Shown here piece by piece: positions 5,718-27,154 of a stretch of DNA of 64,000 bases. The notes beneath the pieces were generated by a model. That model worked only from the letters and a program-made list of their open reading frames with translations, was not told the origin of the DNA and searched no databases. Each line of letters opens with the position of its first letter. Position 1 is the stretch's first letter. Origin of the DNA: Zootoca vivipara (lineage: Eukaryota). A program made the translations under genes and the position numbers. The stretch is taken from contig NC_083277.1 of NCBI RefSeq assembly GCF_963506605.1, positions 92,380,001-92,444,000 of the forward strand, in the 5' to 3' direction.

Positions 5718-8700
5718 TCAGCGTGTCCACTGTATGATAATAACAGCTAAAAAGATGACAGATAAAATCAGGCGGGTGTAATAAAGCCCTTTCTCCATAA
5801 GGACCATTGTTTTATCCCACGCGACTGATTCAGGGTCACCCTGGTGTTCTTCTAGAGAGAGATGTTTCTTGATCTGTTGCAGTTCCATATTCAGATGTTT
5901 CAGAAACACCAAGTTGTCATCTTCACTGTCTTTTGCTGGCAAGGGAAATCCATCTGCCGGCTGGTTCTCTTTGGGCCTCCTGTCTCCTGTACAGATGAAA
6001 ATGGGGATATATGTTAATCTGTTAAGAAGGATATGTTTGGGAACAGACATTGTTTGAGAATAAAGAAATGTAGAGTTAAAGAACTGCTTATTTGATTCTA
6101 AATTCTGGTGTATGGTCCACTTGAATGTGTGTCGGATGCATTGCATCTGTTATAACGCAACGTGAAGCAAGATACCTCCACCTTCATTAAAACCAATGCC
6201 AGTTATTTGATTCCAGGCAGGGCCTGGGTTTTCCTTGCAAGACTCAAAGTGCTGGAGAAGACCCTGCGAGTCAAGAAGGCTCTTGCGGTGCAATTCTATG
6301 CATCCCTACTGAGAGCTAAGTTCCACCATCAAGTTTAGTTGAATGTTCTCCCAGAGAAGTGTTTCAGCCTTAAGGTATGCAGGTTAAGTGCCTCTAACAG
6401 AGGCAATATTAATATTTTCCTGTACGTAATGAATGAAAAAAGAGCTTGTACCTGATTTATGCTTATTTCCACTTTCTCTATTGCGTGAAAGTGCATGGAA
6501 GGGATCAGACATGACACATTTGAGGCTAAACAGAATGAGTGAAACTTGTGAAATTGCCCAGACCTTAGATTAATATGGATTGCTTCCTTCCACACTTACT
6601 TATTTGAGCTATCAAGTACATTTCACACATTACTCAGAAAAGCATACAAGCTTATTCCAACTGTACATTCTGGAGGGAGCTTATTTTTTTCCCTTTTTAA
6701 GAGTGTATATAAAGGGAGATGTAACCCAATTTTGATCGTATGTATAGTTTGCCAATTCTGATCAGGCCCTTAGCTGGGCCCCACAAATTCCAATTCCTAA
6801 GATGCATTCTCTCTGTTTGAAGATCCATTAGTGCCTTCTTGCCAAAGTGTAATGTAAACTTTATACAGGATGATAGGATGCCCTGCTAGCTATCAAGGCC
6901 GGATGGCTGGCCTTGTCTGACGCTACCAGTCTGACGCACAGACCATGCAAGATAGACAGGAACTCAAGCCCCCATACTCAAGGCTGCTTGAGGCTGCTAC
7001 CAGGGTACATTGACAACGTGTATGATAAGGTGCAGGACAGGAATCTTCCTGTATATGTAACCCTTGACCCCTTTACTTGCACACACTTACAGAGTGGATT
7101 CATGGGGAGGGGGTAGAGGAGCCCAAAAAGGGGATAAATGCCCCATGCAAACTGTCTTTCTTTGCTCTTGTCATAAAGCATCACCAAGTGCCTTTCTCTA
7201 TAGAGAAAATAAAACTCTTTCTCTGAGCTCAACCCCTCGGTGTCGGTTTTTGACTGTCTTATAGTAATGGGTGATGGTGCTTGATATCTGCACCCTTCCC
7301 CTGCTTTATAGGTGCCCCACCTCCTTATGGTAAATTGTTTACATTTCGGAAAACGCTTACCTAAATGGGTCGCCGGGCTCTCGCGTTCCTCTTTCTTCCT
7401 GCCCAGGATTCTATTCATGAGTTTATTCCCCTTGAAGGATGGCAACTTTGGTCTCTTCTCTTTGAGATAGAGTACAAAAGCGTTCTCCAAGATACCAAGG
7501 ACCAGAAATACAAACATCCCAGTGNNNNNNNNNNNNNNNNNNNNNNNNNNNNNNNNNNNNNNNNNNNNNNNNNNNNNNNNNNNNNNNNNNNNNNNNNNNN
7601 NNNNNNNNNNNNNNNNNNNNNNNNNNNNNNNNNNNNNNNNNNNNNNNNNNNNNNNNNNNNNNNNNNNNNNNNNNNNNNNNNNNNNNNNNNNNNNNNNNNN
7701 NNNNNNNNNNNNNNNNNNAGCTCTCTCAGCCCTCAGAGGGCTTTCCTTTAATGTGGAATGGGGAACCCAAGGACTCTTCCAGTGCTTGGAACTCTCAATG
7801 AGTCTTACCAATAGGCTTGCCCTTTGCTCCCTTTGAGTGTTTGCTTGGCTAGAACAGGCATCCCCAAACTTTGGCCCTCCAGATGTTTTGGACTGCAATT
7901 CCCATCTTCCCCGACCACTGGTCCTGTTAGCTAGGGATCATGGGAGTTGTAGGCCAAAACATCTGGAGGGCCGCAGTTTGGGGATGCCTGGGCTAGAATG
8001 TGTCCTTGAAATCAGAAGTGGCCTAGTGTGGTGGAGCCTGCCTCTTTCGCTTTCCAATAGTGACTTACCACTTACTGTCAGGGGGGGAGAGGAGGCAACA
8101 GAGAGGGGCAATGTGGGGTGAGTGCATCAGCAGAGCCTGTCTGGCACTCCTGCTAGTGTACTTGCACTTTGTCAAGCTCCTTCCCTTCCCAACCCCTTCT
8201 CTCTCTCCTAGTAAGCAGCAAGGTCTGGAGGGCAGCAACATGAGAAAACAGGCCTTTTCTGCAGTGGCTCCGTTTGTGGAATGCTCTCCCCAGGGAGGTT
8301 CACCTGGCACCTTCATTATACACCTTTAAGCACAAGTTGAACATTCCTCTCCAACCAGGCCTTTGGCTGATTGACATCTAATGCCCTTTTAAAATTCAGC
8401 TAGGTAGCCGTGTTGGTCTAAAGTGAAAACTATGGAGAGAACTGGTCTGAAGAGAGATATTGGATTCTTGTCTCATTACATATGCTATAACTATTTTTGG
8501 TCATCTGCATTCTATCCCTTGCTTTTTCCTGTAGGACTAATTGCAGTCATTAACAGTCATCAACAGGTTTACCATACCCATTGAGTCAATCACCCATCTC
8601 CTACTACCCTTCTGAGAAAAATCCCACCCCACCCTCCCACTATATATTAGGGTCTGTTGACTTCTGTTTCAGTGTATCTGAAGAAGTGTGCATGCACACG

Positions 8701-26500: not shown

Positions 26501-27154
26501 CCTGCTGGCTGCTCTGCTGGTGGCCCTGCCAGTCTCACACAGCTAGAATTGCAGCTACTAATCTAGCATATGAGTGTTTTGTAATTCTACCCCAACAATT
26601 ATCCCCCTGCTCCAACTTCCCTTCCCTTTCTTTCCCCCCTCCTCAGTATTTGTGCTTAGTCTTATCACTGGAGACCAGACATGTAATGATTATTCCCTCT
26701 TACCACTGAAAGGATGGACACCAGGGTGAAGTCTAGATGAACTTCTAAGGATTCTTCCCAGTTTCTCTTGGGTATGGTGTATGAGAAGAGATCCTTATTG
26801 GAAGAGATGTTCAGATGCTCGGCCACATCGTGGTACCCACAAATCTGTTTCTGGGTGCCTTCTGGAATAGGAGCAAAATGAGAAGATGAATGTGTCAGTA
26901 TGGTACGATTCAAAAGTCTGTGTTCTAGGCAGAGTCCCATGGTATTCTTCCTCTCCTCTCGCTTTGCTGTCTACCATCATTTCGAAAGCCAGTGAACTCG
27001 AGAAATTACTGTCCTTCATTCCAACATCCATCCTACCTTCCATCCATCATGTCTTTTAGTTGATTTGTCAGCTAGTAGAGCAGGATGGAAGAGAAGAAAT
27101 GCTCTTACCTGGCACCCAGGACAGAAGAAAACTCATCATAACAGCTCTCCACAT
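17564..27154 (-). CDS. 5-HT3/ZAC-family Cys-loop ligand-gated cation channel subunit, copy B (9 exons, 446 aa)
   Basis: Exons: 27154-27109 (46, MWRAVMMSFLLSWVP), 26861-26704 (158), 26373-26329 (45), 26223-26114 (110, WTPDIYIEER), 24674-24508 (167, CSLDVHAFPFDEQKC), 23058-22898 (161), 21220-21010 (211, GEKIAFKVTLILQVSLLSLILNDMLP), 18990-18817 (174, M3), 17832-17564 (269, M4, TAA). They sum to 1341 nt of open frame with all GT-AG junctions. Confidence 0.92.
18152..18513 (-). mobile_element. Sauria SINE, full length
   Basis: 13-bp TSD atttcttacatta at 18139-18151 and 18514-18526. Confidence 0.9.
19497..19633. mobile_element. hAT-type MITE (CAGGCATCCCCAAAC family)
   Basis: TIRs with 8-bp TSD gtataaaa. 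Confidence 0.85.
20463..20598. mobile_element. hAT-type MITE (CAGGCATCCCCAAAC family)
   Basis: TIRs with 8-bp TSD tactatag. Confidence 0.88.
21697..22310 (-). mobile_element. RTE (BovB-like) LINE 3' fragment
   Basis: Frameshifted ORF remnant PKDVLYGELASGTKPIGRPTLCYKD, typical of RTE ORF C-termini. Confidence 0.75.
22414..22841. mobile_element. Tc1/mariner (Tigger-like) MITE with internal tandem subrepeats
   Basis: TA-CAGTGGTACCTCGGTTT...AAACTGAGGTATGACTG-TA; repeated gtacttaacctgaagc and aagtaatggaaagtggattaatcc units. Confidence 0.85.
24735..24945 (+). mobile_element. RTE-clade LINE 3' fragment
   Basis: Remnant translation RPRGKPPTQWMDDL...WMQQANSREFWGQLEEVY resembles RTE ORF C-termini. 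Confidence 0.6.

What the first reader, a model, noticed from the sequence alone, without database searches (positions are those of the whole stretch)
5718..27154. Tandem pair of intact orphan Cys-loop channel genes that fit neither HTR3A-E nor ZACN
Seen: two complete 9-exon genes, each with a signal peptide, a 15-residue Cys-loop, M1-M4, intact splice sites and open frames. The ORF track shows only fragments of them. Known: the exon sizes and the M2 signature (GE-K-x-x-FK-x-TL) place them in the 5-HT3/ZAC branch, and E at position -1' indicates cation selectivity. The sequences are far from human 5-HT3A and ZAC as I recall them. Inference: this may be a reptile-retained or reptile-expanded lineage of pentameric channels with an unknown ligand. 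It could act as a homomer or an A/B heteromer, possibly in a sensory or immune role, by analogy with cephalopod chemotactile receptors that arose from tandem nAChR duplicates. This is the best candidate for an undescribed system in the window.
Basis: partly seen in the sequence, partly recalled or inferred. Interest (0 to 1): 0.85.

Follow-up and report, generated by a model that had tools for sequence, protein, structure and literature searches.

The report
Tandem 5-HT3-like channel genes, lizard
Two neighbouring lizard genes encode cation-channel subunits of the serotonin 5-HT3 receptor family; they belong to a fast-evolving branch found in amphibians, reptiles and birds but not retrieved from mammals, they lack most of the serotonin-binding residues, and they are already predicted in public annotation but have never been studied.

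Summary
The observation largely holds. Two nine-exon Cys-loop receptor genes lie head-to-tail on the minus strand: g1 at 5718-15268 and g2 at 17564-27154. All readable junctions are GT-AG and the phases fit. g2 is a complete 446-codon frame. In g1 the start of exon 8 and its acceptor lie in the N gap (7525-7718), so intactness there is unverified.

The genes are not undescribed. They match RefSeq models from Zootoca vivipara named "5-HT3A" or "5-HT3A-like", and each has a 1:1 Podarcis orthologue.

They are not HTR3A orthologues:
- identity to solved 5-HT3A is about 30%;
- the neighbours are MRPL58 and CDR2L;
- most of the 5-HT aromatic box is replaced.

5-HT3A is still the closest solved relative by sequence and fold. 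ZAC is much further.

A rooted ML tree places them in a strongly supported clade of frogs, caecilians, turtles, crocodile, birds and squamates. The lineage is therefore not reptile-specific. The g1/g2 split predates the lacertid-amphisbaenian divergence.

Pore residues predict cation selectivity. dN/dS is 0.20 in M1-M3 and 0.44 in the ectodomain.

Orthology to mammalian HTR3B-E or ZACN could not be tested, because no such sequences could be fetched. Expression could not be tested either. Ligand and partners remain unknown.

The parts
15223..15268 (-). g1 exon 1: ATG and signal-peptide-like MWRAVLVSFLLPWVP; donor GT, end phase 1
14191..14348 (-). g1 exon 2 (158 nt): N-terminal helix region, NCS..HDV..LNIS
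13785..13829 (-). g1 exon 3 (45 nt): QEKLQVVTFYFWMYV, loop D Trp
13577..13686 (-). g1 exon 4 (110 nt): loop A region
12060..12229 (-). g1 exon 5 (170 nt): loop E, Cys-loop CSLDVHAFPFDQQKC, loop B position
11146..11306 (-). g1 exon 6 (161 nt): loops F and C
9034..9244 (-). g1 exon 7 (211 nt): pre-M1, M1, M2
7525..7718 (.). Assembly gap (194 N). It hides the acceptor and about the first 10 nt of g1 exon 8. Not filled.
7361..7524 (-). g1 exon 8, readable part: M3 and the start of the M3-M4 loop
5718..5986 (-). g1 exon 9 (269 nt including TGA): amphipathic helix and M4
27109..27154 (-). g2 exon 1: ATG, MWRAVMMSFLLSWVP
26704..26861 (-). g2 exon 2 (158 nt)
26329..26373 (-). g2 exon 3 (45 nt). The species' RefSeq model skips it; the Podarcis model includes it.
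26114..26223 (-). g2 exon 4 (110 nt)
24508..24674 (-). g2 exon 5 (167 nt): Cys-loop CSLDVHAFPFDEQKC
22898..23058 (-). g2 exon 6 (161 nt)
21010..21220 (-). g2 exon 7 (211 nt): M1-M2
18817..18990 (-). g2 exon 8 (174 nt): M3
17564..17832 (-). g2 exon 9 (269 nt including TAA): amphipathic helix and M4
40710..45898 (-). Upstream neighbour: MRPL58 (mL62/ICT1-like). Four exons matched, including the GGQ motif exon.
   Evidence: the fused Phrynocephalus model P0163 carries PF00472
51465..52379 (-). Last coding exon of a CDR2L-like gene
   Evidence: atlas score 0.98, cluster 'Cerebellar degeneration-related protein 2-like'

Best explanation
g1 and g2 are functional tandem paralogues that encode subunits of a cation-selective pentameric ligand-gated channel. 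They belong to the 5-HT3 receptor family in the broad sense.

Their lineage is old and found across non-mammalian tetrapods (amphibians, turtles, crocodilians, birds, squamates). Here it sits beside MRPL58 and CDR2L, not at the classical HTR3A/B locus. The pair arose by a tandem duplication of about 12 kb before lacertids and amphisbaenians diverged.

Shown:
- the gene structure;
- family placement by sequence, fold and tree;
- conserved pore determinants (-1' Glu, 0' Lys, 6' Thr, 9' Leu, 20' Asp);
- stronger purifying selection on M1-M3 than on the ectodomain.

Inferred: the principal-face aromatic residues that hold serotonin in 5-HT3A are replaced. W183 becomes Ser or Thr, F226 becomes Met, and Y234 becomes Phe or Ile. 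These subunits therefore probably do not bind 5-HT on their own principal face. They most likely act in heteromers, with each other, with the neighbouring third paralogue or with a true 5-HT3A. In that role they would tune a cation channel as accessory subunits, as 5-HT3B-E do in mammals. The agonist is unknown.
For: Structure: nine exons each, GT-AG throughout, matching phases and open frames. The 446-aa Podarcis RefSeq model agrees exon for exon.

Family:
- Pfam LBD and TM domains.
- Best solved relative is 5-HT3A for single exons (E 2e-10 and 1.6e-5) and for the g2 orthologue (163 bits against 125 or less for nAChRs).
- The AF2 model (pLDDT 82.6) has its top Foldseek hits in 5-HT3A at E 1e-29.

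Tree (nAChR-rooted): tetrapod clade 100/99; g1 with Podarcis and g2 with Podarcis each 100/100; Rhineura groups with g2 at 97/92.

Locus: MRPL58 and CDR2L lie upstream.

Constraint: dN/dS between g1 and g2 is 0.52 overall, 0.20 in M1-M3, 0.44 in the ectodomain and about 1.0 in the loop.

A third paralogue lies on the same chromosome, and its Podarcis lilfordi locus tags are consecutive with those of the pair.
Against: - There is no expression evidence.
- g1 cannot be shown intact at the exon 8 acceptor, which lies in the gap.
- Assembly partners are pure inference.
- Birds appear to carry a single gene of this clade. That fits a homomer, or partnership with 5-HT3A, better than partnership between paralogues.
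- Binding-site residues vary across the clade: W90 is lost in birds and turtles, and the loop B aromatic is lost in squamates. That pattern also fits lineage-specific ligands.
- A dN/dS of 0.52 is high for a neurotransmitter receptor.
- No mammalian HTR3B-E or ZACN sequences were in the tree, so 'separate lineage' is shown only relative to the non-mammalian set.
Confidence: 0.55

Rival explanations
1. Orphan-ligand receptor. g1 and g2 form homomeric or g1/g2 heteromeric channels gated by something other than serotonin, such as a metal ion, protons, another amine or an environmental or prey-derived chemical. They would serve a peripheral sensory or barrier-tissue role.
For: - The aromatic box is eroded while the pore is conserved.
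- The ectodomain evolves faster than the transmembrane domain.
- The gene has been duplicated repeatedly in squamates and turtles.
- A distant fish relative filed as ZAC is Zn2+-activated although it is no closer to human ZAC than to 5-HT3 (PMC11536092, PMC13036004).
- A zebrafish '5-HT3A-like' gene is the top marker of a peripheral gill cell cluster (PMC9203529). Its clade is unknown.
Against: There are no expression or functional data. Loss of the binding aromatics is equally typical of accessory subunits. No conserved alternative binding motif was identified. The fish precedents are not shown to belong to this clade.
Confidence: 0.28
2. Classification rival: the clade is simply the non-mammalian orthologue of mammalian HTR3C/D/E (or HTR3B), moved to a different chromosomal neighbourhood. 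It would then not be a separate lineage.
For: - NCBI names one Anolis member '3C-like'.
- From my memory only: human 5-HT3C/E also lack the loop B Trp, carry the N-terminal and beta2-beta3 Cys pair seen here, and have an ND.LPA motif after M2.
Against: - The score against 5-HT3A (163 bits, about 30% identity) is lower than I would expect for B-E, which I recall as 36-41% identical to A.
- The neighbours are MRPL58 and CDR2L, not the 3q27 or 11q23 gene sets. Those human map positions are from memory.
- A sister group closer to 5-HT3A exists in frogs and teleosts.
Confidence: 0.15
3. The clade is the non-mammalian counterpart of ZACN. Mammalian ZAC would then be a relocated, fast-evolving descendant of this MRPL58-linked gene.
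For: - CDR2L and MRPL58 lie on human 17q25.1, the band that also holds ZACN. This map position is from my memory.
- ZACN is reported as mammal-only (PMC10513076), and this clade was not retrieved from mammals.
- Both have nine exons and fairly short M3-M4 loops.
Against: - ZAC chains score far below 5-HT3A and nAChRs (26.5 bits on the M1-M2 exon). They are absent from the top lists.
- The model has MX and MA helices, which mammalian ZAC lacks (PMC13036004).
- There are no Cys residues in M3 or M4 for the ZAC disulfide.
Confidence: 0.08
4. One or both genes are unexpressed or decaying copies, kept open by chance or by recent duplication.
For: Overall dN/dS is 0.52, with about 1 in the loop and M4. 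The g1 junction in the gap is unverified. There are no expression data.
Against: - Both frames are open over about 446 codons with all readable splice sites intact.
- The duplication is old: it predates the lacertid-Rhineura split, and dS is 0.32.
- Both copies are kept as 1:1 orthologues in Podarcis.
- M1-M3 dN/dS is 0.20.
Confidence: 0.07

Closest known systems
5-HT3A receptor subunit (mouse and human; e.g. PDB 4PIR, 6HIN, 8BLB)
   Same: - Best sequence and fold match.
- Cys-loop with FPFD, four TM helices, and predicted MX and MA helices.
- -1' Glu, 9' Leu and 20' Asp in the pore.
- Loop D Trp and loop A Glu are kept.
   Different: - Only about 30% identical.
- Loop B W183, loop C F226 and Y234, and loop E Y153 are replaced.
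- Extra Cys pair at positions 23 and 98.
- Shorter M3-M4 loop of about 100 residues.
- Different genomic neighbours.
- Fast evolution: 88-90% identity between Zootoca and Podarcis.
5-HT3B-E accessory subunits of mammals
   Same: They are 5-HT3-family subunits with incomplete agonist sites that need a partner. This is the working analogy for mechanism, and it rests on established knowledge.
   Different: Orthology is untested because no sequences were available. The locus differs. No mammalian member of this clade was retrieved.
Zinc-activated channel (human ZAC; medaka olZAC, PDB 8WGE)
   Same: A cationic Cys-loop channel outside the classical transmitter set. The orthology of non-mammalian 'ZAC' is itself disputed (PMC13036004). 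It may share a chromosomal region with this locus (from memory).
   Different: Much lower similarity. ZAC is not among the top sequence or fold hits. An MA helix is predicted here but is absent in mammalian ZAC.
Other vertebrate '5-HT3A-like' clades: teleost F1 and F2, teleost 'core', frogX
   Same: They sit in the same rooted superclade (99/99) and carry the same automatic RefSeq names. They share the N-terminal Cys and the DFC motif.
   Different: They are separate clades. The teleost 'core' and frogX groups are much closer to 5-HT3A (316 and 277 bits) and keep an aromatic residue at loop B.
Cephalopod chemotactile receptors (e.g. squid CRB1, PDB 8EIZ)
   Same: A pLGIC fold recruited from a transmitter-receptor family through tandem duplication, with loss of the canonical agonist site.
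   Different: Only a weak hit (E 2e-4 on the M1-M2 exon). They derive from nAChRs. No evidence here points to a sensory role.

Membership tests
Cys-loop / pentameric ligand-gated ion channel superfamily | Extracellular C-x13-C loop with the F/YPxD motif | tested here: met
   CSLDVHAFPFDQQKC in g1 and CSLDVHAFPFDEQKC in g2. PF02931 E 1.7e-9 and 3.3e-10 on the single exons.
Cys-loop / pentameric ligand-gated ion channel superfamily | Beta-sandwich ectodomain followed by four transmembrane helices | tested here: met
   Four hydrophobic segments. PF02931 and PF02932 on the orthologues. The AF2 model of the g2 orthologue has pLDDT 82.6 and Foldseek TM 0.68-0.80 to 5-HT3A.
5-HT3 receptor family (broad sense) | Closer to 5-HT3 subunits than to nAChR, ZAC or the anionic receptors | tested here: met
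   5-HT3A is top. In the rooted tree the genes fall inside the vertebrate 5-HT3-like superclade (99/99).
5-HT3 receptor family (broad sense) | Cation-selective pore: -1' Glu and 20' Asp rings, 9' Leu gate | tested here: met
   E, K, A, T, L, F/L, M/L, I, D at -1', 0', 2', 6', 9', 13', 16', 17', 20'. Selectivity itself was not measured.
5-HT3 receptor family (broad sense) | Nine-exon structure with the exon sizes of HTR3A | tested here: inconclusive
   Nine exons of 46+, 158, 45, 110, 170/167, 161, 211, 174 and 269 nt. The human exon sizes are known to me only from memory and were not compared with a tool.
HTR3A orthologue (serotonin-binding subunit) | Aromatic box for 5-HT: W90, W183, F226, Y234, Y143, Y153, with E129 | tested here: not met
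   W90 and E129 are kept. W183 is S in g1 and T/I in g2; F226 is M; Y234 is F or I; Y153 is F or L (anchored on the HMMER alignments).
HTR3A orthologue (serotonin-binding subunit) | High identity to mammalian 5-HT3A, and a conserved locus next to HTR3B | tested here: not met
   About 30% identity and 163 bits. The neighbours are MRPL58 and CDR2L. No other Cys-loop gene type is in the window. The human HTR3A/B map position is from memory.
HTR3B, HTR3C, HTR3D, HTR3E orthologues | Nesting with the mammalian subunit in a gene tree | not testable with these tools
   No mammalian HTR3B-E sequence could be obtained as a tool reference. All three homologue searches returned non-mammalian proteins only, and no solved structures of them appeared.
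ZACN (zinc-activated channel) | Sequence and fold closest to ZAC | tested here: not met
   olZAC scores 26.5 bits against 44 bits for 5-HT3A on the M1-M2 exon. ZAC is absent from the best 60 sequence hits and from the Foldseek rows listed to rank 50.
ZACN (zinc-activated channel) | No amphipathic MA stretch, and the Cys289-Cys394 disulfide of mammalian ZAC (PMC13036004) | tested here: not met
   A helix at 377-405 runs into M4 in the model. There is no Cys in M3 or M4 of g1 or g2.
ZACN (zinc-activated channel) | Shared ancestral chromosomal position | tested here: inconclusive
   The window holds CDR2L and MRPL58. That these lie about 1 Mb from human ZACN is from memory.

The most novel reading that the evidence does not exclude
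The MRPL58-linked clade is a distinct, mammal-lost class of vertebrate pentameric cation channel whose agonist is not serotonin. Its ectodomain would have been free to diversify between lineages and between tandem copies, giving lizards a small family of orphan chemoreceptor-like channels. A further possibility is that this lineage is what mammalian ZAC descends from.
Probability: 0.25. Interest if true: 0.7.

Novelty: new member of a known kind. Interest (0 to 1): 0.42.

Why it matters
Vertebrate cationic Cys-loop receptors are usually listed as nAChR, 5-HT3A-E and ZAC. This locus belongs to one of several 5-HT3-like lineages outside mammals. These lineages carry automatic names such as "5-HT3A" or "5-HT3A-like", and I found no paper on them in the held library. 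Those names are misleading here: two different Zootoca genes are both called 5-HT3A, and neither has the serotonin site.

Three things follow if the lineage is a separate branch.
- Comparative pharmacology that treats "reptile or bird 5-HT3A" records as serotonin receptors needs correction.
- There is a tractable set of orphan channels to de-orphanise.
- The current dispute over whether fish "ZAC" is a true ZAC orthologue (PMC13036004) gains missing context.

If instead the genes prove to be plain HTR3C/E orthologues, the finding is ordinary.

Tried and rejected
- Searches with a spliced model. I left out the step of sending a joined g1 or g2 protein to any search tool. Exons went in one by one by reference. 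Database orthologues (P0158, P0151, P0004) stood in for the whole proteins. Spliced translations were built only inside local scripts from window coordinates, with X at the g1 gap, for alignment, tree and dN/dS.
- Gap. Same-species RefSeq proteins that span the gap exist (P0159, P0356). Their letters at that place were not read, printed or used, and they were left out of the trees.
- Mammalian HTR3A-E and ZACN references. Three homologue searches, the representative search and the atlas gave none.
The only cross-species hint is the fused MRPL58 plus channel model in Phrynocephalus.
- Expression. Those letters were sent to no database, pattern, paper or findings search afterwards. They were included only in two within-window comparisons in local scripts. 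The small-share 'RNA?' runs are not evidence.
- Exon 9 alone against solved structures gave no significant 5-HT3A hit. The MA-M4 resemblance I saw by eye is not supported by sequence statistics; only the predicted helix supports it.
- I asked whether medaka olZAC belongs to fish clades F1 or F2. It does not: 5-HT3A is top for both.
- Literature searches for a described lineage found nothing specific. Rao et al. 2023 (PMC9977066) does not resolve it.
- Earlier notes of this scan gave nothing relevant.

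
Full report
**What is in the sequence**

The region holds two copies of one gene, both on the minus strand. A tblastn of the window with exon-sized peptides found exactly two sets of hits and no third copy. I located the exons with a full-length lizard homologue (P0004). 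I then read every junction and tabulated them.

Each gene has nine exons: 46 (from the ATG), 158, 45, 110, 170 (167 in g2), 161, 211, 174 and 269 nt. All readable junctions are GT-AG. The end phases 1,0,0,2,1,0,1,1 match from one exon to the next, and there are no in-frame stops.

- g2 (27154-17564) is a complete 446-codon frame.
- g1 (15268-5718) has 443 readable codons.

Both genes begin with a hydrophobic signal-like exon. Both have a 15-residue Cys-loop with FPFD, five or six N-glycosylation sequons in the ectodomain and four hydrophobic segments. The 45-nt exon 3 was missed by tblastn and found by motif.

The 446-aa Podarcis muralis RefSeq model P0158 matches my g2 model exon for exon. 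The RefSeq model for this species skips exon 3 and uses another first exon.

**The gap**

The N run 7525-7718 touches g1 exon 8. The readable part starts at 7524 with the third base of a codon. Judged by the length of g2 exon 8, about 10 coding bases and the acceptor are hidden.

Sequence on both sides is collinear with g2: intron 7 above the gap and exon 8 below it. The frame continues correctly into exon 9. So g1 looks intact, but it cannot be certified at that junction. I put X there and filled nothing.

**The duplication**

The repeat unit runs from about 5453-16077 to about 17315-27895, at 72-83% nucleotide identity. It includes about 0.8 kb of 5' flank. The proteins are 70.6% identical, and dS between the copies is 0.32.

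**Whose genes they are**

g1 is identical to P0159 at every position outside the four X. P0159 is XP_034963847.2, '5-hydroxytryptamine receptor 3A [Zootoca vivipara]', and an earlier 447-aa version of that record also exists. g2 matches XP_034954961.1 / XP_060127035.1, '5-HT3A-like', apart from seven substitutions and the model differences.

The window is therefore from the common lizard or a very close relative, and both genes are already predicted in RefSeq.

A third, more distant paralogue lies on the same 123.56-Mb chromosome (XP_034954966.2, also named '5-HT3A', about 46% identical). In Podarcis lilfordi its locus tags are consecutive with those of the pair. It is not in this window.

**Family placement**

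Single exons hit Pfam Neur_chan_LBD and Neur_chan_memb.

Against solved structures:

| Query | Best hit | Other hits |
|---|---|---|
| M1-M2 exon | 5-HT3A, E 2e-10 | alpha7 4e-8; medaka ZAC 6e-5 |
| Cys-loop exon | 5-HT3A, E 1.6e-5 | |
| Whole g2 orthologue P0158 | 5-HT3A, 163 bits, about 30% identity over 290 columns | nAChRs 125 bits or less; no ZAC in the best 60 |

An AlphaFold model of P0158 built with a 40-sequence alignment has mean pLDDT 82.6. It shows the usual N-terminal helix, beta-sandwich and M1-M3, an MX helix, a disordered stretch, and an MA helix running into M4. Its Foldseek hits are led by 5-HT3A (E about 1e-29, TM 0.68-0.80), followed by alpha7 and muscle nAChRs. ZAC is not among the rows listed to rank 50.

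**Distribution and tree**

Homologue searches returned proteins from squamates, crocodilians, turtles (several copies each), many birds, frogs, caecilians, a sturgeon and many teleosts. Nearly all carry the automatic name '5-HT3A-like'. No mammalian protein was returned.

I ran a careful ML tree: 39 rows, 454 columns, LG+C20+F+G4, rooted on two mollusc nAChR-like proteins. It gives:

- a vertebrate 5-HT3-like superclade (99/99);
- inside it, a tetrapod clade (100/99) that follows the species tree in outline: frogs, caecilians, then amniotes, with birds beside turtles, and crocodile beside squamate lineages B and A;
- g1 and g2 each pairing with a Podarcis protein (100/100);
- the amphisbaenian Rhineura joining g2 (97/92), so the duplication predates the lacertid-amphisbaenian split.

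The sister of the tetrapod clade (96/93) is a group of two frog proteins plus a teleost 'core' clade. That sister group is far closer to mouse 5-HT3A (277 and 316 bits) than the window clade is (163 bits). Two further teleost clades score 175 and 205 bits.

The tree's limit is serious. I could not obtain any mammalian HTR3A-E or ZACN sequence as a tool reference. The position of those genes relative to this clade is therefore inferred, not shown.

**Neighbourhood**

Upstream on the same strand lie four exons of MRPL58, including the GGQ exon (45898-40710). Further up lies the last exon of a CDR2L-like gene (52379-51465; atlas score 0.98).

A Phrynocephalus gene model fuses MRPL58 with the channel (P0163, Pfam PF00472 plus the two channel domains). 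That indicates the same adjacency in an agamid.

From memory, these neighbours lie on human 17q25.1. That is not where HTR3A/B (11q23) or HTR3C-E (3q27) lie, and it is about 1 Mb from ZACN. It is a lead only.

**Functional reading**

I aligned 35 family members and anchored positions on the HMMER alignments to 5-HT3A.

| Site (5-HT3A numbering) | g1 | g2 |
|---|---|---|
| Loop A E129 | kept | kept |
| Loop D W90 | kept | kept |
| Loop B W183 | Ser | Thr/Ile |
| Loop C F226 | Met | Met |
| Loop C Y234 | Phe | Ile |
| Loop E Y153 | Phe | Leu |
| Loop E Y141/Y143 | Tyr/Tyr | Met/Phe |
| Loop A F130 | Arg | Arg |

Across the clade, the loop B residue is:
- Trp in Microcaecilia;
- Tyr in Ascaphus and Rhinatrema;
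- Phe in birds and most turtles;
- small or polar in all squamates and the crocodile.

W90 is lost in birds and turtles. The agonist site is therefore not held constant across the clade.

The pore is held constant in squamate lineage A: -1' Glu, 0' Lys, 6' Thr, 9' Leu and 20' Asp.

dN/dS between g1 and g2:

| Region | dN/dS |
|---|---|
| M1-M3 | 0.20 |
| Ectodomain | 0.44 |
| M3-M4 loop | about 1.0 |
| Overall | 0.52 |

Orthologues in Podarcis are only 88-90% identical.

My reading is that these are working channel subunits with a cation pore and a fast-evolving, non-serotonin principal face. Accessory or heteromeric use, as for mammalian 5-HT3B-E, is the most economical mechanism. A new agonist is the main alternative.

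**Literature**

- Rao et al. 2023 (PMC9977066) catalogue more than 1000 '5-HT3' records but do not resolve this lineage.
- Jensen 2023 (PMC10513076) states that ZACN is found only in mammals.
- The medaka 'ZAC' structure paper (PMC11536092) and the 2026 human ZAC paper (PMC13036004) show that a fish relative responds to Zn2+. They also report that it is under 24% identical to human ZAC and no closer to it than to 5-HT3, so its orthology is doubted.
- A zebrafish '5-HT3A-like' gene marks a peripheral gill cell cluster (PMC9203529).
- I found no paper on the sauropsid genes.

**What could not be done**

**Verdict**

The genes are real and the anatomy is as described, with one unverifiable junction. 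They are already annotated but misleadingly named. They belong to an uncharacterised 5-HT3-like lineage found across non-mammalian tetrapods, not to a reptile novelty. Whether that lineage is separate from mammalian HTR3B-E and ZACN remains the open and decisive question.

Noticed in passing
window 29077-33941: An LTR retrotransposon sits between MRPL58 and g2. Two 300-nt direct repeats are 100% identical (29077-29376 and 33642-33941). They flank one uninterrupted 1358-aa gag-pol frame (29438-33514, minus strand) with RVT_1, RNase H, integrase zinc-binding and integrase core domains. It looks like a very recent insertion. I only observed it.
   Followed up: partly
outside the window; proteins P0169 and P0368: A third, older paralogue (squamate lineage B, about 46% identical) lies on the same Zootoca chromosome. 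In Podarcis lilfordi it has locus tags consecutive with the g1/g2 pair, so the locus is probably a three-gene cluster whose third member is just beyond the window.
   Followed up: partly
RefSeq records XP_034963847.2 and XP_034954966.2: NCBI's current annotation names two different Zootoca genes of this clade '5-hydroxytryptamine receptor 3A'. Neither has the serotonin-binding residues. The same naming occurs in alligator, sea turtles and a caecilian.
   Followed up: partly
window 13244-13397, 16283-16453, 18022-18316, 61521-61829: A dispersed repeat, probably a SINE, gives similar spurious ORF peptides (...RLPRPIE.D...TGP.GQG...) in introns and between the two genes, in both orientations.
   Followed up: no
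window 7850-7999 (g1 intron 7); g2 19492-19642 and 20457-20598: A block of about 150 nt in intron 7 matches g2 intron 7 in both orientations (87% and 79%), and matches a second g2 site at 94%. It is a palindromic or mobile element next to the assembly gap, and may be why the assembly broke there.
   Followed up: no
window 17564-27154 compared with P0154: g2 differs from the species' RefSeq protein at seven residues, whereas g1 is identical to its RefSeq protein outside the gap. This suggests a different individual or lineage and a polymorphic g2.
   Followed up: no
window 1400-1900: A GC-rich stretch gives overlapping ORFs on both strands with repeated peptide motifs (HAPGMRAMPL...). It looks like a tandem repeat and not like coding sequence.
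   Followed up: no
window 3463-3765 and 28037-28336: A 300-nt block, 80% identical, lies beyond both ends of the tandem duplicon: downstream of g1 and upstream of g2. It may be another dispersed repeat or a remnant of the duplication boundary.
   Followed up: no
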